A DNA stretch of 58,884 bases, filler included, from Platydemus manokwari (lineage: Eukaryota): assembly GCA_037951405.1 (NCBI GenBank). It is 6 parts of 6 records of this genome, joined end to end, with 100 filler letters (N's around TTAATTAATTAA, not from the genome) between each part and the next. Parts side by side here need not be neighbours in the genome. Positions count along the whole stretch, not along the records: positions 9,833 to 18,800 come from JBBMOY011321649.1; 5 more parts are not named here. One strand, 5' to 3'. How positions within the stretch are numbered: the stretch's first letter is position 1; every line of letters starts with the position of its first letter. Shown here one piece after another: positions 9,833-18,800 of this stretch. The position numbers and the translations under genes are program-made. Below the pieces are notes generated by a model. That model saw nothing but the letters and a program-made list of their open reading frames with translations, was not told the DNA's origin and did not search any database.

Positions 9833-10149
9833 ATTTATTTTTAATATAATTTTTTAAAAATATCTTTTAACTCAAATTATATATATTTTAATTATTTATA
9901 GTATTTTTAAATAAACCTCACAATACCAATTGATTATCGAGTTATAAATATGGATTAATATATAGGTAGAATGTGATTGGCTATTGCCACGTGCACTTGT
10001 CGAATCAGTGTGTATAAAATCTCTGCGGGTTATTTTCCACGGTTTCGATTTTTTCACCTATCCAATAAATGTACTAATTCAGTCTTTGAAAAAGGTTTCA
10101 ACCTCGAATAATGCGACTCAGCCTTGCTTAAAGCAGGAGACTATTCAAC

Positions 10150-11190
10150 TAATTTGATAACTGAAGGTATCATACAATTATCACTTTCAAATAATAATTT
10201 TTTAAAAAGTTTTATTACTGGTTGTCATCCTGGAGAATCTCATTTAAAAATCATGAACCCATTTAATAAAAGTAATCCAGTCCATAATTTTACTACATGA
10301 ACATTTTAAAAATAAGAAGAAATTTTAAATAATTATAATACAATTCTAGAATTAAATGATTCATCTGGAACCAGACTATTCCTCCAATTCCAAAAGATAA
10401 ACATAGACAAATGAATAAGATTGATGAAATCATAATGCAGCATGATGTTAATTTACAAGATTTACAAGATAGAAATTTTGCAGATTCAAAAATGATACAG
10501 AATATGTCTTACGTTTAGAGAAAAAATAGAAAGAATTGGGCAGTGCATGTAACACGCGAGAAAAGCTAAAGATCTAGTTATTAAAAATATTTGAAAACAC
10601 AGAAGAAAAAGTTAAAAAAGTAATTATAGAAAGTTATATGGTAAAAACCTATTATCTCAAGATTTACTCAATGTTTATAAGGTTAATAAGAAATTTTTGA
10701 AGGTAGAAATATTTGGAAATTTTGTGAATATGAAATAATTTTATAACATGCAGAAAATGATGGTGAATCTGTGTGTGTTCAAAGATTTATTAGAACTTTA
10801 AAGAAAGATGAGGAGACATTTTACAGCTAAAGGAAATCAAAAAAAGGATAATGATTCATCACAAAGCATAGGTAATAAATATTATAAAAAATTCATTGAA
10901 GTATTGGGACTAGTACTGCAGAACTTAAAAAAATTCAGAAATTATTAAAGAAAAAGTTGATAATCAAAATCATGAAAATGAAATCTTAAATGAAAAATTA
11001 AAATTTAAAGTTTTAAATAGAGTAAGAATAATAAATGTAAAAATAAATTTAACAAAGGTCATACTGCTAATTTTACAAAAGAAATATATATTATTTAAGA
11101 AGTTTGTAAAACAAAATCTATAACTTTTAAATTAATTGATTTAAAATATGAAAAATTATGGGGGAGATTTTATAGTAATGAACTTCATTA
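10150..11190 (+). mobile_element. decayed Polinton/Maverick (adintovirus-like) segment: PLA2-like ORF plus retroviral-type integrase
   Basis: 10381-10535 gives MNKIDEIIMQHDVNLQDLQDRNFADSKMIQ..TFREKIER (PLA2-like D..C/M..HD..Y..DR..AD motif). 10770-11190 gives CVQRFIRTLK..HFTAKGN..KFKVLNRVRI..FNKGHTANFTKEIY..TFKLIDL..GRFYSNEL (Polinton integrase ERFNRTLK...KFKVGD.VRI...KGYT.NW..EIF...G.FY..EL). Many stops and frameshifts. Confidence 0.75.
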
Positions 11191-12275
11191 AAATAAATTT
11201 TTGAAGATGAAAAGTAAAAGTTTCTTAATTTCTTTGGTTCAAGGCATATCACCGTTGAGATGAGAATTTATACCTGAGACCAGGAAGAAGGGAGCGGCAC
11301 TCATGAAAACAAAAAATGGATTTCCAGTGTAATCTATATCTAAGACATTTTATTATTATGTTTGTACTTTTAATTAATAAAAAATAAATAAATTTTTATT
11401 TAAAAACTAATATTGGAATTAACTTTAGGTTGATAAATGTTGAAATATTTTTAAAATAAGTTTTTTTTAATATTTATTAATTATATTTTTACACCAGAAT
11501 TGGGAATTGAATTGATAAACATGGCAATCTATTTCCAAACAACCATAATTTTCATATAAAATTTGTTAGTCGATTTATTATCACTGCATAAATTATATTT
11601 TGATTAATGGTTTATATCATCTGAAATTCCTCATAAATTTGATATTATTTTTAAATTATAGCTTTAGATCTTCTTCAATTTTTATCCGAGGAAACATTTC
11701 AGTATTCATAATGATATTTTCAATATTTATATTAGGAATTGGATTTTCAAAAATTACTTTTTTAAAATTTAATTTTTGGTGAATCATTTCTTCCAGTAAA
11801 AATTGTTACAGAGTCAAAATTTTTTTGAATATTTATTGTTAATTCATTCATCACGGTAAATGATTTCGGCCTAATGGCAAGTCAGAGGTAAATCAAGTTA
11901 AATGACAGTGGATAGGAATCCATTGGTAGACAATTATGGAATAGTGAATTCTAAATACTACCAGATACTGAACAGTAGAGTGGCCTAAAAATCGACAATT
12001 AATTGATTAACTCTGTTTTTAACAGAGCAAAATTTTACACCACTTATATATTATGTTTTGGCAGGTCATCTTCTTTATAATTTCAATATATTCCACTTTT
12101 TGAGCTCAATTTTGTAATACACCGTCGTCATTTATGATAATACCAGTTATGCAATATTATAACAGTTTATCTGACCTATTAATCTGTTATGTAAATTTGA
12201 AGTAAAATTTCAAATTTATTTATGATTGAAACATTATAATTTTAGTATGATTTGCCTTCATTAATACGATTAAAT

Positions 12276-12511
12276 GTGCCCTTGATTATGAAAGTGGTAT
12301 AAGTCATATATTTCTTTTTTGGAGATATTATGGGATTTGCATGTTAAAGAATTAAAAAATATTTGAGTATTATGGAATGAAATATTTTGACAATTAATTA
12401 CTGCCGGTAAATCAGCATTTAATATGATTGTGAAATTTATTACCATTTTTAAATGGAAATTTGGTTTTGAAAGGTTGAAATGACTTATACCACTTTCATA
12501 ATCAAGGGCTC
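12276..12511. mobile_element. MITE with 31-bp TIRs and 4-bp AAAT TSD (Sola1-like)
   Basis: GTGCCCTTGATTATGAAAGTGGTATAAGTCA ... TGACTTATACCACTTTCATAATCAAGGGCTC, flanked by AAAT at 12272-12275 and 12512-12515 (AWWT target typical of Sola1). Confidence 0.85.
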
Positions 12512-13399
12512 AAATATATTCTTCCTTTCTGTCATTCATTATAAATACTCTATATTTTATTTCTTCTAATATAATAATCGTAGAAATCTTTGCTTTTGGA
12601 ATTAATTTTTAAGGAGATTTCCAAATATAATTAATTAATATGAGAAAAAGAAATTGCAATTCCTCAAAGGGTTAATTCATCTCATTGTAAACTAATGATT
12701 GAGATACGATTTAAGATTTTTATTGAAAGAAATGTTACAAATATCAAATGGAATTTTTAAATAAATCAATCATCTTGGCTATGATTCATTTCGATTAGTC
12801 ATTTTGAGCCATGAAATGATTTGAATCGCTAATACCAGATCAGTAGGTATTTGCATTCATAATTACATAATATAACCATCGCACCGACAAATCATATACA
12901 TTCTTTAACTACCACATGCCAATTAATCTCTCCGGGTACATTGTTACTAGTAAAAGAAAAATTATGTATAGCATAATGACGTTTCTTTACTATGTTCTAA
13001 TCATTACAAGTGATTTTCCAGTTCATCATTTAAAATGATGTCGACATTTTAATTTTCTTTTACTTTTAATTTGATATATTTTTTCACAGAATAAATTTAT
13101 AATAAATTTTATAATTCACATTTTGTTAAAAATTTAAAAGATAATTTCACACAAATTTATCTTTTGTTACTTGTTGAGTTTAGAAGAAATGAAATAATTT
13201 GATACGAATTTGATTGTTTTATTCTTCATCACGAATTATCTCACTATTCGTTTAAATTAATTTCCAAAATTTATAAAACGGCACAATTAATGTATTATTC
13301 GATTTCTAATTTTATTACTTATTAATTAAAAAGGGATTCCGGATATATATTCGATGGATTGACCATTCTGTTAAAGCTGTTATTGATAGTGAACATTCA

Positions 13400-14050
13400 A
13401 GAAATTGATAAAGAATTTTTAAACAAACTAAATTAAACGATAAAGAATCTTGTATATAAAATCATACCAAAGTGATTTCTTGTTATCAACAATCAACATT
13501 TAAAATCAACTGAAGGTCGAATTGATTGTTGACGTAATGATCGATGAAAATCCTAATCATTTCATTATAATTATTATTTCAAATAAAACAAAAGCTATTT
13601 TCTATTATGATTTACATTCCAAAAATGATCTATGACCATCGATATAACACTTTCCAAATCTTTCATCAGATTTTTGAACTTGAAGAATCAGCAGTAATAT
13701 AATTGCTATTCACTAACAGACAATTTTTAAAGTACACATAATAAATATTTGATTTCTCTGATTCAGAAACATATGGATTGTATGGCTGACTATTAAATTA
13801 TTAAACATCTTCTAAAGCCAAAAACTTGATTGATTAAAAATTCTATATCTCAAATTGATTTGATCCTTAACAAACATTTCATTTGAGCTTTATTGTACAG
13901 TTTGTCAGAAATGTAAATTAAACGAAGCTGCAAAATTAGGGGGTAGATTGTATTGTTGAGAAACACGCAGTTCTTCAAAATTTATAATCGAAAACCAGAT
14001 CGGTACAAAATATATCTACAAAATTCTTACTCAATTAACATAAATTATTT
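13400..14050 (-). mobile_element. decayed non-LTR (LINE) RT fragment
   Basis: Minus-strand FLINQVFGFRR (QFGFR motif) with a degenerate LLD.QKAFD.VW-like segment downstream. Many stops. Confidence 0.35.
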
Positions 14051-14440
14051 GAAGCTCATATTCTTTTCCCATAGTAATTCAATCATAACAGTCTTAAATA
14101 ACTGATAAATATCGAGTTTTCTAATTATAAACTAAAATTATGTTATTAATTTATAATTTTATAAACATGTTGAATGTAAATATTTATTACAGCACTGTTT
14201 TAGAGGTTCTATGTATGTTTATTATAATTTCTTCTCTCTATTTGGCGCATGCTGAAGATTTGTCCTAGTAATCCAAATTTCATTAACAAATTAATTTATA
14301 ATTATTTAAAATTATAAATTCACTTAATACTTCGGTATCAATAATTTTACGATTCCTATCGATGAAAAAGAGTTCAATAATCAATTGTTATTTAAAGAAC
14401 CTACAACGGAATCAAACAAACATAAAGCAAAATACACACA

Positions 14441-15160
14441 TTAGCCAGTATGAACGTTACAAGGATGTCGATGCTTCGGATTGTGTCGCAGATAAAAAGC
14501 AGATCTGATTTCTGACATTGTACTATTCAGATAATTAAATAATAATTCGATCTCGAACTGAATGCTCATTTTGTCCGTTAAATCATAGAGCTCTTTGACA
14601 ATCGCTAATATTTCTTGTGACCACGGATGGAATTTGGTAATGACCTTTCCCGATTTTAAACCCCTTAAAATATGACAAATAAACGGCAATATGTATTCCA
14701 ATGAATCTTTGTATTCTTGATAACTATCTCGCAACAGACCTTTAAGATCGATACATATATGAATATCTTTCGCCAATGTCAATCGTCCAAGAAAGTTTCC
14801 CAAATTACGAAGATGATTCATTGCTCGAATGTCAATCGTGCAATTCTTCAATATGATGTCAATCTCTTTCTTTGCCAATTCAATAACCATATTACTGAAT
14901 CCGGGTGAATATTCTCCATAAGCATTTATAAACGATGAATACATGTCTATAAGATTCGTCTCTATTCGACATCTGGAAATGAGAAATATTCCCAACCAAT
15001 TCTCGGAGTTTTGTGGAACAATATTGGAGATTTCTTTGGAAGTCTGACCAATATTCAAATCGGACATATTGTTGATGAGAAATATCACACGCTTGTGAAC
15101 CGATTCACCAGGAAAATTAGATGAATTAATTTTAGATAATTTCAGTTGTTTTTGTGTCAT
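14441..15160 (-). CDS. stand-alone CNOT1-type MIF4G (CAF1/DDX6-binding) domain protein, 239 aa, intronless
   Basis: Colinear with the central CNOT1 MIF4G: VIFLINNMS (IAFIFNNLS), WLGIFLISRCRIETNL (WVSQYLVMKRVSIEPNF), LRNLGNFLGRLTLAK (LKNLGHWLGMITLAK), LEYILPFICHIL (LLYVVPFVAKVL), HPWSQEILAIVKELY (NPWTMAIMNVLAELH), IQFEIELL (LKFEIEVL). ATG 15160 has an in-frame TAA three codons upstream; the ORF ends with its own stop. Confidence 0.85.
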   Translation of the reverse strand: MTQKQLKLSKINSSNFPGESVHKRVIFLINNMSDLNIGQTSKEISNIVPQNSENWLGIFLISRCRIETNLIDMYSSFINAYGEYSPGFSNMVIELAKKEIDIILKNCTIDIRAMNHLRNLGNFLGRLTLAKDIHICIDLKGLLRDSYQEYKDSLEYILPFICHILRGLKSGKVITKFHPWSQEILAIVKELYDLTDKMSIQFEIELLFNYLNSTMSEIRSAFYLRHNPKHRHPCNVHTG

Positions 15161-15681
15161 GAGATATTAATCGGACATTGATAATTTTTATTGAATGTTA
15201 TTAATTAAAATATTATTTGCTATCATTATGAAAATCTGACGATAATTCAATTATCTGTAAAGAAAAGAGTTTATTTTTAGGATTCTTTCAACCATAAAGT
15301 TTTCAACAATAGTTTTTCTCAGAAGAGATTGATTCAATAATTATTACACAATTGCAGATTATTAATTTTAAAATTGTTGTAATACTTGAAATAAAAATGA
15401 AATAGCAACACACTTAATTAATCATAGAAGTAAATCTACATTATACGGAACTCGTGCTCATACATTGTCGCACACACGTGGTTATATAATTTATTTACTG
15501 ATATTTACTGATAATTATTAATCAATGTAGAAAAATAAATATATAAATAATAATTCTACGAAATCTACGTGACATAGATTGAATCTGGTTAAAGTCTGAA
15601 TAATAGAAAAAGAAAAATTTACAAATTGATTAAAGACAATTGTTATAGACCAATCGATCGAGTTGTCTGAGACAATCATCT

Positions 15682-17921
15682 CTAAGTATTGGAATTTTCA
15701 TGATAGACTTGAACGGCCATGATATCACCAGTAGAAATAGTTTGTGTACCCACACTTGTTGTCCCAATGGACCGCTGAGATCGATTACTTGCTTCAAAAG
15801 AGCTCGACGGTCTCGATATATCCTGAATGGAATTGATTTCCCCTGGTATACCACTCGAACTGCTTAAACATTCTGTAGACGATTGAGTGGGACTCGGAAC
15901 AGTTGTCACTGAATAATCTCCCAAATCAACTTGGTTTGGTTGATAATCCCAATCATTTAAATCGTCCTCTGAGTCCATTTTTGACAATTGAAGAATCTCT
16001 GCCAGCTCCTCATCTATATCGTGATAGGTGTTAATAATATTCCGTTGTTCTGACATAAGACTGGGACAACACGACACAGAATCGTTATCAACACTATGAG
16101 TATTGTTGAATGATTTTTTCTGAGTGTGAACAAGATCTCCACAAAATCTTTGAACGATATCTTTATCGGATTCTTTCCAAACTTGAGTTGCTCGCCACTT
16201 AGCTCTAGATTGTTTCGGGGCGAGAATCGCATTGAAATAAATGCATTCACCGACCTACACAAATATCATTAACAGATATCTATTAATAAAACAATGACGA
16301 TTGAAAATGAACATATTTAGTAATATACTTTTAATTCTCTCGATGTAAATAATTAGAATTATGCGTTAACAGTTACTTGACCATTAGTGATCTTAAAAGT
16401 TTGTGAAGCATATCCAAATACGATTTTTCACTCTTTAATAGAATTAAACATAAATCTAATCCAACATATTATTGCTGTAATGAAGACAGTATTATAGTAG
16501 TTTCAATTCAAATGTAATCCACTGACTAACATTAAGTATCGAATTAGTCCTAAGATAAGACGAGTCCCAGTTCTTACCGAAAAACTATTTTAAAATTAAA
16601 TCTTTTATGAATCCAGTAATAAAACATAAAATTTGTAGAAAAAAACAATATAAAATTATTTTAAATCGATTCAAATAAGGAAAAACAATTCAAGAAAATC
16701 TAGTTTTATATTCGACCTAATGAGATATTTATATTTTGTGGTGTTGAAAATACTCCTGAATTTCTCAATATTTACCTGAAAATGTCTTTGTAGATCGTCG
16801 AGGTGTTTGAAGATTGATTTGTCAAAGAAAACATGTTCATGTTGACCTAGGTCGACAATTCCCCAGAGTTTAGTCACATGGTAAACGTTTCCACATTGAT
16901 TAATGATTGTGCGCACCCCATCTTTAGTAGATACATCATCATTGACAATAATGCTTATCTCTTCAGTATCTAGACAAGAAACCTGGCCTTTTCTGTCAAT
17001 ATGAAATAAAGTTGTTTGCTTGCGAATAAATTCCTCCAATTCGATTTTCGTCCATCCAATGCAATCTCGAACGGAGGACGGCGCTTGTGCTAAATACAGG
17101 AACAAATGATTTACGCTGATCTTAGCACAAGTTTTTCTGCGTATTATAGTGCGTAAAAACATTGCAGCTTGAAACTCTCGACTGTCAATGGCAACTGATA
17201 GTTTAGAGCTCGTTGGAATAAGCCTAGGTTCCTTTTCTCTTTCAGAATGATTTATTATCATTGAAGTCGGTCGACCTCGTTTCACAACATTTCTATTGCT
17301 TATAACCGCTGATCTTGGTCTAGTTTTCGAAGCTCTCGAAAGACAAATAGACGAGAAATTGTCCCGAAGGCTTACTAAATCGCCCTGAATCTCAAATACA
17401 TGAGGATGTCGCTGGATAAATTTACGGAAGAAAGCTTGGGGACCAACAACTTTACGAATCGATTCAGATGCCTGAGATAAATGGCCAGCTAAGCTTTTAA
17501 TTTGAATCCAATGTTCTTCACGCTTTGCCAGTTGGGACTGAAAATATTTCACTGCTTCCGTTTCTTGTGCAAGATCGACAGGTCGTCTTAATCGATAAGA
17601 CTCACTTTCTGAACGAGAAATATTTCCATTCTCAAGATCCACACTGCTCGCACAATCTGATACATCGATTGGCGATACAAATTGACCATCGATTTGAAAT
17701 AGCGATGGATATTTCTCCATAAATGATCGCAGGCCGCTTATATTGAAACCACAAACCTCTTGCATGTCATTGCTAACGTTTTCTGCGAAAATTTTGCTCC
17801 CGAGTTCTTCTATCGATAACGATGTTTCGGAGTTCATAAGGACTTCTAATAAGAACAACATAGCACGGTGATTTGGATCGTTCATCATTTTATATAAACT
17901 GGCTTCTCTCAAATAATTCAT
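15682..17921 (-). CDS. Egalitarian-like RNA-binding protein (3 winged-helix/LOTUS-like repeats + OB/cold-shock-like domain + C-terminal LC8 motif), 572 aa, 2 exons
   Basis: Exon 1 17921-16776 (donor CAG|GTAAAT) and exon 2 16254-15682 (acceptor GTGTAG|GTC) join as HFQ|VGECIYFNAILAPKQSRAKWRATQVWKE. Egl-type repeats GLRSFMEKYPSLF, IKSLAGHLSQASESIR..FIQRHPHVF and LEEFIRKQTTLF. C-terminus VGTQTISTGDIMAVQVY resembles the Egl (S/T)QT.STGD dynein-light-chain site. Confidence 0.85.
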
Positions 17922-17952
17922 ACACGAATCAACATCTAATAAAAATGATGAA

Positions 17953-17955
<3 letters not shown>

Positions 17956-18012
<57 letters not shown>
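17956..18012. repeat. (AAT)n microsatellite immediately upstream of the Egl-like ATG
   Basis: About 19 perfect AAT units. Confidence 0.95.
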
Positions 18013-18800
18013 CAAAAATAATAATAATAATAAATCAAATATAAATCTCAAGAAATATATTAAAAAGATACTAAATGTGTACTTAATGCCTTGTCCAATA
18101 TATTAATTAATAATAAAACATTATATTGTGTACCGAATATTATTTTCAGCAAATTCTGGTTCAATTCATTTTCTATTTTATTCTATATTTTCCTAACATA
18201 AAATCGATATCGAGAAAATCATGGAAAAACATTCTAAAATTATCCGTGATTAAGACTAGATGTGAATTAAAGGATTCCTCAAATGATATTTCACGAATTT
18301 GTTAATAAACAAACCCATGATATTAAAACGATATCGAGCTGACAAAACGGGATGATGATATCGAAACAATATTAAATATCCTCTCAATACATTCCCGGTA
18401 TCATAAATTTTTTGTCAATATCTTTGTAAATATCAGCCCTAAAATCGATATCCAATAAAAACGAAAAATTCGTTCAAAAACTGATTAATCTAATTTCGGG
18501 TATTGGCATTATGAAATTTTGATAATTATCTGTCACCCGTAGGAATTTGTAATGGAAAGTTTTTTATAATTTAATTTAAGGACTCGATTTTGGTTTGTAA
18601 ATTTTCAAATAAAATTTTAGGTTCAACGATAATTCTGTAGGAGCTGAAACTCCGAAACATTCATCACTACACTACTGATTATGTCGATATATAAATCGAT
18701 AAAAAAAAATCTTCTGAATACATTCATGTCTATTTCACTGATTTGTCCGCAAGAATCTAAGATATCTGGAAATATTTGATTCTATTAACGAACAACTATT

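What the first reader, a model, noticed from the sequence alone, without database searches (positions are those of the whole stretch)
14441..15160. Stand-alone 'mini-NOT1': an intronless gene encoding only the CNOT1 MIF4G domain, with DDX6-contact motifs kept and CAF1-contact motifs drifted
Seen: an intact 239-aa ORF with its own ATG and stop that is just the central MIF4G domain of CNOT1, normally one module of a very large scaffold. Established: this domain binds CAF1 on one face and binds and activates the DEAD-box helicase DDX6/Me31B/Dhh1 on another. Comparing with human CNOT1 from memory, the DDX6-face motifs are retained (FLINN vs FIFNN; RCRIETNL vs RVSIEPNF; QFEIE vs KFEIE), whereas the CAF1-face segments are altered (AKDIHIC-IDLK vs AKNKPILHTDLDVK; TKFHPW vs RPPNPW). 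Inference: a retrocopy-derived module that engages DDX6 independently of the deadenylase, acting as an activator or decoy in RNP granules (planarian chromatoid bodies contain a DDX6 homolog).
Basis: partly seen in the sequence, partly recalled or inferred. Interest (0 to 1): 0.8.

Follow-up and report, generated by a model that had tools for sequence, protein, structure and literature searches.

The report
Free-standing CNOT1 MIF4G gene in flatworms
This is a real single-exon gene encoding only the MIF4G domain of the CCR4-NOT scaffold CNOT1; the same short protein is conserved across free-living and parasitic flatworms beside a normal full-length CNOT1, so it is an old, selected, apparently unstudied spin-off of the mRNA-decay machinery.

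Summary
Window 14441-15160 (minus strand) is an intact 239-aa ORF that is a complete CNOT1 MIF4G domain and nothing else (Pfam PF16415, E 4.7e-42; AlphaFold pLDDT 91; TM 0.82 to human CNOT1 MIF4G).

It is not an exon of CNOT1 and not a decaying copy. A stop lies 9 nt upstream of the ATG, and no other CNOT1 domain lies within 3.6-4.6 kb.

I found 32 relatives of 136-256 aa (all but two 216-256 aa) in unidentified close relatives, monogeneans, trematodes and cestodes. The eight distinct genomic loci read, the window included, are all single-exon. Three species carry a full-length CNOT1 on another contig.

Against the closest relative, 198 of 239 residues are identical, yet 125 of those use a different codon. 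That indicates strong purifying selection.

All 33 share a 3-residue deletion in one CAF1-binding loop, and PPN of PPNPW is lost in nearly all. The tested DDX6-binding residues (E1142, N1144) and FEIE are kept.

The remodelled CAF1 loops are strongly conserved, not drifting, and this protein still has V1251, P1257, W1258 and K1218.

No RNA or binding data could be obtained, so the function (most likely a DDX6 regulator outside CCR4-NOT) is inferred.

The parts
14441..15160 (-). Complete single-exon CDS (239 aa, ATG to TAA) of a free-standing CNOT1-type MIF4G protein
   Evidence: orthologues of 136-256 aa (all but two 216-256 aa)
14471..15112 (-). MIF4G / CNOT1_CAF1_bind domain (residues 17-230): ten helices forming five HEAT-like hairpins
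   Evidence: Pfam; AlphaFold2 pLDDT 91.4; Foldseek TM 0.82, rmsd 1.6-1.9 A to 5anr_A, 4ct4_A and 4gmj_A
15068..15082 (-). End of helix 1, FLINN (human F1101-N1105). F1101, N1104 and N1105 are kept in all short-family members that have a residue there. It includes position 1103, one wall of the pocket for DDX6 Arg386
   Evidence: PMC4138323
14951..14974 (-). Helix 3/helix 4 loop, RCRIETNL (human R1138-F1145). It carries the tested DDX6-binding triad as E, N, L
   Evidence: triad E1142R/N1144A/F1145A defined in PMC4478352
14741..14773 (-). Former CAF1 loop between helices 6 and 7, AKDIHICIDLK. It is 3 residues shorter than in every canonical CNOT1 and the invariant P1209 is lost; K1218 is kept
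   Evidence: 11 residues in 33/33 short proteins against 14 in 143/143 canonical; PMC3510486
14621..14647 (-). Former CAF1 loop between helices 8 and 9, KVITKFHPW, replacing (V/K)VFRPPNPW. V1251, P1257 and W1258 are kept; F1252, P1255 and N1256 are changed
14546..14560 (-). Start of helix 10, QFEIE. F1281, E1282 and E1284 are invariant in all 33 members; K1280 is Q in all 32 that have a residue there, and one residue (L1275) is deleted just upstream
15167..15169 (-). In-frame TAA 9 nt upstream of the ATG; it closes the frame
15255..15266 (-). Pyrimidine tract plus AG (acceptor-like) about 95 nt upstream of the ATG. It could be a 5'UTR or spliced-leader acceptor. Sequence only, unverified
14183..14223 (-). 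Two AATAAA hexamers 218-258 nt downstream of the stop codon; candidate poly(A) signals, unverified

Best explanation
Shown (about 0.9 or better): window 14441-15160(-) is a functional single-exon gene for a 239-aa protein that is a complete CNOT1-type MIF4G domain and nothing else. It belongs to a discrete paralogue family. I have 33 members of 136-256 aa (all but two 216-256 aa), found only in flatworms: four free-living-type sequences including this one, plus monogeneans, trematodes and cestodes. The family exists beside the normal 2400-3200-aa CNOT1 and has been inherited vertically under purifying selection. Inferred origin: a flatworm CNOT1 transcript segment was copied, most simply by retroposition, before the split between this window's group and the Neodermata. 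After a burst of change (stem branch about 1.1-1.3 substitutions per site) the copy settled into a new conserved form. Inferred mechanism (about 0.4): the protein is a CCR4-NOT-independent docking and regulatory module for the DDX6/Me31B-type DEAD-box helicase. It keeps the elements that the CNOT1 MIF4G uses to hold DDX6: the FxxNN end of helix 1, the R...E.N loop between helices 3 and 4, and the K...FEIE turn before helix 10. Its two CAF1-docking loops are rebuilt, so it either stimulates DDX6 away from the deadenylase or competes with CNOT1 for DDX6. An isolated human MIF4G domain is already known to bind DDX6 and 4E-T without CAF1 and to repress translation when tethered.
For: Domain identity and fold. 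Stand-alone gene: there is a stop 6-54 nt upstream of the ATG in all six loci then in hand, and only the MIF4G part of CNOT1 is found in any of them. Gene ranges equal the CDS length, meaning a single exon, in Dibothriocephalus, Protopolystoma, a Schistosoma-like contig, Taenia crassiceps and Calicophoron. Family; the species names come. Full-length CNOT1 lies on a different contig in Calicophoron, Dicrocoelium and Taenia crassiceps. Selection: against L001, 198 of 239 residues are identical and 125 of those use another codon; identity by codon position is 0.82/0.93/0.38; pN is 0.096 and synonymous sites are saturated. Discreteness: the short proteins form one clade with SH-aLRT 100, and its internal topology follows flatworm phylogeny. 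All 33 have the 11-residue loop against 14 in all 143 canonical sequences, and 7-9 of 9 signature changes against 0-4. Flatworm origin: in the first tree the sister group is flatworm canonical CNOT1. Holding the two together gives a tree 71.8 lnL better than the free quick search, p-AU 0.98. W1198F is shared by both groups. Retroposition: the Taenia parent gene has introns at about residues 1074, 1200 and 1310, in and around the MIF4G region. DDX6 face: E1142 is E in all 32 short proteins with a residue there (76% in canonical). N1104, N1105, R1138, F1281, E1282 and E1284 are likewise kept in every member with a residue there (32 or 33 each). N1144 is kept in 26 of 32. The tested DDX6-defective mutant is E1142R/N1144A/F1145A, and a free MIF4G binds Xp54 and 4E-T independently of CAF1 (PMC4478352). 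The Arg386 pocket is F1103/L1106/F1145 (PMC4138323), and these positions stay aliphatic in the short proteins. CAF1 face: P1209, F1252, P1255 and N1256 are 85-96% conserved in canonical CNOT1. None is kept in the free-living-type members, and each survives in only a minority of the parasite members. V1251 is S, T, R or Q in nearly all parasite members (one has P), and V1251R abolishes CAF1 binding. Complementary pattern: all seven full-length neodermatan canonical CNOT1s have N1144 replaced by A, S or T but keep the CAF1 loops.
Against: No RNA, protein or binding data exist for this gene. The only run holding the locus is genomic DNA. This window's protein still has the CAF1 hot spots V1251, P1257, W1258 and K1218. 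The rebuilt CAF1 loops are the most conserved blocks among the free-living members (11-12 of 15 identical where the whole protein is 53% identical), so that surface still binds something. The excess loss of canonical invariants at CAF1 positions is not significant by column (3 of 7 against 27 of 40 kept, Fisher p 0.24). Canonical-invariant basic residues K1114, R1189 and K1280 are lost in every member with a residue there. I place them on the DDX6-facing edge from HEAT topology alone, and F1145 is Leu, so DDX6 docking may also be altered. The full contact lists of the DDX6-CNOT1 crystal structures were not readable here.
Confidence: 0.45

Rival explanations
1. The protein still docks a CAF1/POP2 deadenylase, possibly one of the extra flatworm CAF1 paralogues, as well as DDX6. 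It would then act as a minimal alternative scaffold of the nuclease module, or as a competitor that pulls CAF1-CCR4 away from full-length NOT1.
For: The window protein keeps V1251, P1257, W1258, K1218 and probably H1212. These include two of the three residues mutated in the CAF1-defective construct and the K1218 equivalent needed in Drosophila. The rebuilt loops are the best conserved region among the free-living members. Schmidtea mediterranea has additional CAF1 genes (not7A, not7B, not7C.1, not7C.2; PMC3868585).
Against: The loop between helices 6 and 7 is 3 residues shorter in all 33 members, and the 96%-conserved P1209 is gone in the free-living-type members. The cis-proline motif PPN is replaced and the N1207-S1249 loop-stabilising pair is lost in this protein. 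In the parasite members V1251 is polar or Arg and the cestode (diphyllobothriidean) members have His at P1257. A family-wide CAF1 function is therefore unlikely.
Confidence: 0.25
2. The copy has taken on a new function. The domain keeps the MIF4G fold but now binds a different partner (another DEAD-box helicase, or a non-helicase protein or RNA) through its family-specific surface. The retained DDX6-type residues would then be mainly structural.
For: The stem branch is long (1.1-1.3 substitutions per site). A fixed family signature changes surface charge: D/E1097 to K, K1114 to Q/V/T, R1189 to G/M, K1241 to H/E and K1280 to Q. New loop sequences are strongly conserved. Other MIF4G domains pair with other helicases, for example eIF4G-eIF4A and CWC22-eIF4AIII among the weaker fold matches.
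Against: E1142 is more conserved in the short proteins (32/32) than in canonical CNOT1 (76%), and N1144 and FEIE are kept. These are surface residues of a mapped DDX6 interface, not core residues.
Confidence: 0.2
3. It is not a gene of its own. It is an exon or fragment of the real CNOT1, or of a fusion with the upstream Egalitarian-like gene, mis-read as stand-alone.
For: A GT-containing string (CCTT|GTAACG) near the 3' end and an acceptor-like tract upstream could in principle serve splicing. The Egalitarian-like gene ends only 520 bp upstream on the same strand.
Against: A TAA lies 9 nt before the ATG and there is no AG until codon 23. The start Met, the first residues and the stop position are conserved in the two closest relatives. 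No other CNOT1 domain lies in the flanks of any locus. The gene is annotated as a single-exon gene on a different contig from CNOT1 in three chromosome-scale assemblies. The Egalitarian neighbour is not conserved.
Confidence: 0.03
4. It is a dead retrocopy that happens to keep an open frame.
For: It is intronless and a partial copy of a large gene. No expression evidence was obtainable.
Against: The frame is open in 33 sequences across the phylum with near-constant length. Third-codon-position identity is 0.38 against 0.93 at second positions. Pfam scores are 145-166 bits in divergent members.
Confidence: 0.02

Closest known systems
MIF4G (CAF1-binding) domain of CNOT1/Not1, the CCR4-NOT scaffold (human 4GMJ, 4GML, 4CT4, 5ANR; yeast 4B8C)
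   Same: It belongs to the same Pfam family (PF16415). It has the same ten-helix fold (TM 0.82, rmsd 1.6-1.9 A). It shares the conserved core and the DDX6-side motifs: FxxNN, R...E.N and K...FEIE.
   Different: It is a whole protein, not one module of a 2400-3200-aa scaffold, so it lacks the TTP-binding HEAT domain, the CNOT9-binding domain and the NOT1 C-terminal domain. One CAF1 loop is 3 residues shorter and has lost P1209. PPNPW reads KFHPW. Four canonical basic residues are replaced.
Isolated human NOT1 MIF4G fragment (residues 1093-1317) used experimentally (Waghray et al. 2015, PMC4478352)
   Same: It is a free MIF4G domain of the same boundaries. That fragment binds Xp54/DDX6 and 4E-T independently of CAF1 and represses translation when tethered. 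This shows the module can work detached from the scaffold.
   Different: That fragment is a laboratory construct with wild-type CAF1 loops. Here the detached domain is a natural, conserved gene with altered loops and no known means of reaching an mRNA.
Plasmodium NOT1-G, a lineage-specific paralogue of NOT1 (Hart et al. 2021, cited in PMC12746107)
   Same: It is a lineage-specific duplication of the CCR4-NOT scaffold gene that was kept for a specialised role.
   Different: NOT1-G is a full-length scaffold paralogue. The flatworm protein is a single domain.
MIF4GD/SLIP1 and other small or modular MIF4G partners of DEAD-box helicases (eIF4G-eIF4A, CWC22-eIF4AIII)
   Same: These are about 220-aa all-helical MIF4G units that work as adaptors or regulators; several control a DEAD-box ATPase. 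This comparison rests on my own knowledge plus the weak fold matches.
   Different: They belong to different sequence families. The general MIF4G model PF02854 matches only faintly in some short-family members, and fold similarity is much lower (TM 0.5-0.6).

Membership tests
Pfam PF16415 CNOT1_CAF1_bind (NOT1-type MIF4G domain) | Profile match above the curated cut-off over the full domain | tested here: met
   144.3 bits against a cut-off of 33.4, profile positions 5-221 of 225; four other family members score 145-166 bits
Pfam PF16415 CNOT1_CAF1_bind (NOT1-type MIF4G domain) | Five HEAT-like helical hairpins superposing on solved NOT1 MIF4G structures | tested here: met
   Ten helices, pLDDT 91.4; TM 0.81-0.83 and rmsd 1.6-2.8 A to 5anr, 4ct4, 4gml and 4gmj, and TM 0.78-0.79 to yeast 4b8c, 4b89 and 4b8a
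Pfam PF16415 CNOT1_CAF1_bind (NOT1-type MIF4G domain) | Canonical CAF1-docking loops (P1209 loop of 14 residues; V-F-x-P-P-N-P-W) | tested here: not met
   The loop has 11 residues in 33/33 short proteins against 14 in 143/143 canonical. P1209, F1252, P1255 and N1256 are changed in this protein; V1251, P1257, W1258 and K1218 are kept
CNOT1/Not1 orthologue (CCR4-NOT scaffold subunit) | A large protein carrying the N-terminal HEAT/TTP-binding domain, MIF4G, the CNOT9-binding DUF3819 and the C-terminal Not1 domain | tested here: not met
   The protein is 239 aa with PF16415 as the only match above cut-off. tblastn with four full-length CNOT1s finds nothing else in the piece. True orthologues with all domains exist separately in flatworms
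Flatworm short MIF4G paralogue family (defined here) | 200-256 aa, PF16415 only, own Met and stop, 3-residue deletion in the loop between helices 6 and 7, L1275 deleted, K1280Q, K1114 and R1189 lost | tested here: met
   The window protein shows 9 of 9 signature states and falls inside the SH-aLRT 100 clade
Retrogene (processed partial copy of a parent gene) | Intronless where the parent has introns | tested here: met
   Single exon in the window, L002/L003, L004, L005, L008, L010 and L011. Taenia crassiceps CNOT1 has exon breaks at about residues 1074, 1200 and 1310
Retrogene (processed partial copy of a parent gene) | Located away from the parent gene | tested here: met
   Different contigs in Taenia crassiceps (JAKROA010000001.1 against ...05.1), Calicophoron and Dicrocoelium. 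Not testable for the window's own genome
Retrogene (processed partial copy of a parent gene) | Poly(A) remnant and target-site duplications | not testable with these tools
   The duplication predates the split between this group and the Neodermata and the flanks are 20-30% GC, so any such marks would be erased or indistinguishable
DDX6-binding MIF4G (functional class) | Residues whose mutation abolishes DDX6/Xp54 binding (E1142, N1144, F1145) and the Arg386 pocket (F1103, L1106, F1145) | tested here: inconclusive
   The window protein has E, N, L and I, M, L at these positions. Across the family, E is kept in 32/32 and N in 26/32, and position 1145 is mostly L. Conservative changes do not prove binding
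DDX6-binding MIF4G (functional class) | Physical binding to DDX6 and stimulation of its ATPase | not testable with these tools
   No complex prediction or experiment is available here

The most novel reading that the evidence does not exclude
Flatworms have split the two jobs of the CNOT1 MIF4G domain between two genes. Full-length CNOT1 keeps the CAF1 deadenylase dock, but in parasitic flatworms it has lost the otherwise near-invariant DDX6-contact Asn1144. A free 220-250-aa MIF4G protein keeps the DDX6 dock and has rebuilt the CAF1 loops for something else. DDX6-driven repression and granule function would then be controlled by a soluble, flatworm-specific factor uncoupled from deadenylation, with likely roles in neoblast or germline RNP granules and in parasite development.
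Probability: 0.3. Interest if true: 0.75.

Novelty: new variant of a known kind. Interest (0 to 1): 0.6.

Why it matters
CNOT1 is treated as a single scaffold that physically couples deadenylation (CAF1-CCR4) to DDX6-dependent repression and decapping. A conserved, naturally detached copy of the coupling domain shows that the module has been released from the scaffold and kept by selection across a large part of the flatworm phylum.

This provides a natural separation-of-function allele for asking what DDX6-MIF4G contact does without the deadenylase. The question is testable by RNAi in planarians, where CCR4-NOT and a DDX6 homologue are tied to stem-cell and chromatoid-body biology.

The family was found only in flatworms in these searches and is present in schistosomes, liver flukes and tapeworms. 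It is therefore also a candidate lineage-restricted component of parasite RNA regulation.

The sequences sit in databases under automatic names such as 'CCR4-NOT transcription complex subunit 1'. That label hides the fact that they are a distinct family. I found no paper that describes it.

Tried and rejected
1. Expression. The one run that holds the locus is genomic: its contigs are colinear across genes and intergenic DNA with no joints. Independent transcription, UTRs and trans-splicing therefore remain untested.

3. The primary DDX6-CNOT1 structure papers (Chen 2014, Mathys 2014, Ozgur 2015) are not held. I used interface residues quoted in PMC4138323 and PMC4478352 instead.

4. I read a short Logan contig of a schistosome-like member for a spliced leader or poly(A) tail. 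It has neither and looks genomic.

5. Conserved synteny or an operon with the upstream Egalitarian-like gene is rejected. The Taenia and Calicophoron loci have other neighbours or none.

6. In the free 176-row quick tree the short-protein clade sat next to P0103, an intronless 1917-aa CNOT1 from a metagenome. I rejected this as a long-branch join, because the tree holding the short proteins with flatworm canonical CNOT1 is 71.8 lnL better.

7. A column-wise Fisher test for preferential loss of canonical invariants at CAF1 sites was not significant (p 0.24), so I do not claim a statistical excess.

8. dN/dS could not be given as a number because synonymous sites are saturated in every pair with DNA available. 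Codon-position identities are reported instead.

9. Rfam and tRNA scans of the piece found nothing.

10. Short CNOT1-like proteins from other phyla among the top 150 representatives are fragments of canonical genes. They have the 14-residue loop and 0-4 signature changes, so they are not members.
Full report
**1. What is in the window**

The piece (9833-18800) is AT-rich, with 18-41% GC. On the minus strand, 14441-15160 is an uninterrupted ORF of 239 codons from ATG to TAA.

Pfam places it in PF16415 (CNOT1_CAF1_bind, the MIF4G domain of NOT1). The score is E 4.7e-42 at 144 bits against a cut-off of 33.4, and residues 17-230 cover profile positions 5-221 of 225. So the protein is one complete domain with 16 extra residues in front and 9 behind.

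The best solved-structure relatives are the human CNOT1 MIF4G chains 4ct4, 4gml, 4crw and 4gmj at E about 1e-25 to 1e-26, followed by yeast Not1. An AlphaFold2 model built on a 71-row alignment has mean pLDDT 91.4 and ten helices. It superposes on 5anr_A, 4ct4_A and 4gmj_A with TM 0.81-0.83 and rmsd 1.6-1.9 A, while other MIF4G proteins reach only TM about 0.5-0.6.

**2. It is a gene of its own, not an exon and not a wreck**

- An in-frame TAA lies 9 nt upstream of the ATG, and there is no AG before codon 23.
- tblastn with four full-length CNOT1 proteins (one vertebrate, two trematode, one cestode) finds only the MIF4G segment in the piece. That leaves 3.6 kb upstream and 4.6 kb downstream without any other CNOT1 domain.
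- Upstream on the same strand is a two-exon Egalitarian-like gene (WH_Egal E 2.4e-50; exon structure read). Its stop at 15682 is 520 bp from the ATG.
- Word and profile searches recovered 32 further proteins of 136-256 aa (all but two 216-256 aa) whose only Pfam domain, apart from faint general-MIF4G matches, is PF16415.
- Three of these are close relatives of unknown species: P0001 at 80%, P0002 at 77-81% and P0003 at 53% identity.
- The named ones are monogeneans (Protopolystoma, Cichlidogyrus), trematodes (Calicophoron, Fasciola, Opisthorchis, Dicrocoelium, Trichobilharzia, Heterobilharzia, four Schistosoma species) and cestodes (Schistocephalus, Dibothriocephalus, Mesocestoides, Taenia, Hydatigera, Anoplocephala).
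- In all six loci then in hand the ATG is preceded by an in-frame stop 6-54 nt upstream. In every genomic record the gene range equals the CDS length, meaning a single exon.
- Calicophoron, Dicrocoelium and Taenia crassiceps each also have a 2392-3223-aa CNOT1 with the full domain set, on a different contig.
- For planarians, a single full-length Smed-not1 is on record, and that study does not mention a short paralogue (PMC3868585).

**3. Selection**

Against the closest relative with DNA available (L001), 198 of 239 residues are identical, but 125 of those are encoded by a different codon. Identity is 0.82, 0.93 and 0.38 at codon positions 1, 2 and 3. pN is 0.096 and synonymous sites are saturated. 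GC3 shifts from 0.35 to 0.78 between the two species while the protein is held.

An ORF kept open at near-constant length in 33 sequences across a phylum is not a pseudogene.

**4. A discrete family with a flatworm origin**

In trees of the MIF4G domain the short proteins form one clade with SH-aLRT 100 on a long stem of 1.1-1.3 substitutions per site. Inside the clade the topology follows flatworm systematics: the free-living-type sequences, then monogeneans, trematodes and cestodes. This indicates vertical descent from at least the common ancestor of this window's group and the Neodermata.

In the first tree the sister group is canonical flatworm CNOT1. A larger quick tree instead joined the clade to a long-branched, intronless metagenomic CNOT1. 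However, the tree that holds the short proteins with flatworm CNOT1 is 71.8 log-likelihood units better (p-AU 0.98). Both groups also share Phe at the otherwise 93%-conserved W1198.

The Taenia parent gene has introns at about residues 1074, 1200 and 1310, in and around the MIF4G-coding region, and the short genes have none. Retroposition of a partial transcript is the simplest origin, but it is an inference.

The family has a sharp signature:
- The loop between helices 6 and 7 has 11 residues in 33 of 33 members, against 14 in 143 of 143 canonical sequences.
- Members show 7-9 of nine signature substitutions, against 0-4 in canonical sequences.

**5. The two interfaces**

*CAF1 side.* According to Petit et al. 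(PMC3510486), CAF1 is held by the loops between helices 6/7 and 8/9. The residues involved are K1208, P1209, H1212, K1218, V1250-F1252 and the PPNPW motif with a cis-P1255 and the P1257 'knob'; N1207-S1249 ties the two loops together. V1251R, or P1209Y plus P1257Y, abolishes binding.

In the window protein:
- The first loop has lost three residues, including P1209.
- N1207 is Asp and S1249 is Gly.
- F1252 is Ile, and PPN reads KFH.
- V1251, P1257, W1258, K1218 and probably H1212 remain.

In the parasite members V1251 is S, T, R or Q in nearly all (one has P), and the two diphyllobothriidean cestodes have His at P1257.

The rebuilt loops are not drifting. Between the window protein and P0003 (53% identical overall), the blocks covering residues 1211-1270 are 10-12 of 15 identical, the highest in the protein.

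Counted by column, canonical invariants are kept less often at CAF1 positions (3 of 7) than elsewhere (27 of 40), but this is not significant (p 0.24).

*DDX6 side.* DDX6 Arg386 sits in a pocket formed by F1103, L1106 and F1145, and E1142 bonds Gln333 (PMC4138323; that paper's isoform numbering is 5 lower). The DDX6-defective construct is E1142R/N1144A/F1145A (PMC4478352).

Across the family, counting members that have a residue at the position:
- E1142 is Glu in 32 of 32, against 76% in canonical CNOT1.
- N1144 is kept in 26 of 32.
- Position 1145 is Leu in most, and positions 1103 and 1106 stay aliphatic.
- N1104, N1105 and R1138 are kept in 32 of 32, and F1281, E1282 and E1284 in 33 of 33.

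Against a clean 'DDX6 face kept' reading, D/E1097, K1114, R1189, K1241 and K1280 are each 81-96% conserved in canonical CNOT1 and are replaced in every member with a residue there. From HEAT-repeat topology I place K1114, R1189 and K1280 on the same edge as the DDX6 contacts. This placement is inference and was not checked on coordinates.

A further point came out. All seven full-length neodermatan canonical CNOT1s have N1144 replaced by A, S or T while keeping the CAF1 loops. This mirrors the short proteins and hints at a division of labour between the two genes.

**6. Most likely mechanism**

- *Shown:* a conserved, selected, free-standing NOT1-type MIF4G protein exists in flatworms beside CNOT1.
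- *Established by others:* an isolated human MIF4G fragment binds Xp54/DDX6 and 4E-T without CAF1 and represses translation when tethered.
- *Inferred (about 0.4):* the flatworm protein binds the DDX6 orthologue outside CCR4-NOT. It either stimulates the ATPase or competes with CNOT1 for it. The former CAF1 surface now serves a different or altered partner.

Rivals:
- It still binds a CAF1 paralogue and forms a minimal nuclease-module scaffold or competitor (0.25). The window protein keeps several hot spots, and planarians have extra CAF1 genes.
- It has a wholly new partner (0.2).
- It is an exon of a larger gene (0.03).
- It is a dead copy (0.02).

**7. Novelty**

Searches of the held literature found no description of this family. 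A 2025 review of CCR4-NOT heterogeneity cites only the full-length Plasmodium NOT1-G as a scaffold paralogue and contains no mention of flatworms. Solana et al. list a single not1 gene in Schmidtea. The sequences are public under automatic names.

I rate it a new variant of a known kind. The domain and its partners are known. A naturally detached, remodelled and widely conserved copy is not.

**8. Limits**

- There is no RNA evidence for this locus; the only run holding it is DNA.
- The species of the window and of P0001-P0003 is not identified.
- The canonical CNOT1 of the window's own genome could not be searched.
- The DDX6 contact map is second-hand.
- Absence outside flatworms rests on one exhaustive representative search and one profile word search.

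Noticed in passing
window 15682-17921 (-): There is an Egalitarian-like gene directly upstream on the same strand. Exon 1 runs from the ATG at 17921 to a GT donor at about 16777. Exon 2 runs from about 16250 to the TAG at 15682. Pfam finds three WH_Egal stretches (E 2.4e-50) in exon 1 and nothing in exon 2, and no 3'-5' exonuclease domain was detected in the piece.
   Followed up: partly
window 17937-18033: A (TAA)32 microsatellite lies immediately upstream of the Egalitarian-like start codon. The reads tool skipped it as a repeat.
   Followed up: no
P0042, P0181, P0182, P0183, P0184, P0018, P0026 (L009 for Taenia crassiceps): Full-length CNOT1 of cestodes and trematodes has the near-invariant DDX6-contact Asn1144 (97% across eukaryotes) replaced by Ala, Ser or Thr in 7 of 7 sequences, while the CAF1 loops are canonical. 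This is the opposite pattern to the short paralogue.
   Followed up: partly
window 15255-15266 (-): A strong pyrimidine tract plus AG lies 95 nt upstream of the short gene's ATG and 420 nt downstream of the neighbour's stop. It might be a spliced-leader or 5'UTR acceptor, since flatworms use trans-splicing. There are no RNA data to test it.
   Followed up: no
L001 280-1023 versus window 14441-15160: The closest orthologue has GC3 of 0.78 against 0.35 here, at 80% protein identity. That is a very large codon-usage shift between related species.
   Followed up: no
L006 101-5854 (P0103), and P0011: Two intronless 1917-aa full-length CNOT1 genes from metagenome or unlabelled assemblies attract the short-protein clade in a free tree. 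The AU test shows this is a long-branch artefact.
   Followed up: yes
window 9833-14440: The 4.6 kb downstream of the gene has no ORF of 60 aa or more apart from one low-complexity frame, no Rfam or tRNA hit, and 18-28% GC. It appears to be gene-free spacer.
   Followed up: partly
L010 7838-9701 (+): In Taenia crassiceps a 120-aa gene without a Pfam match ends 300 bp upstream of the short MIF4G gene on the same strand. Tight same-strand spacing with an upstream gene is also seen in the window, but the upstream genes are unrelated.
   Followed up: no
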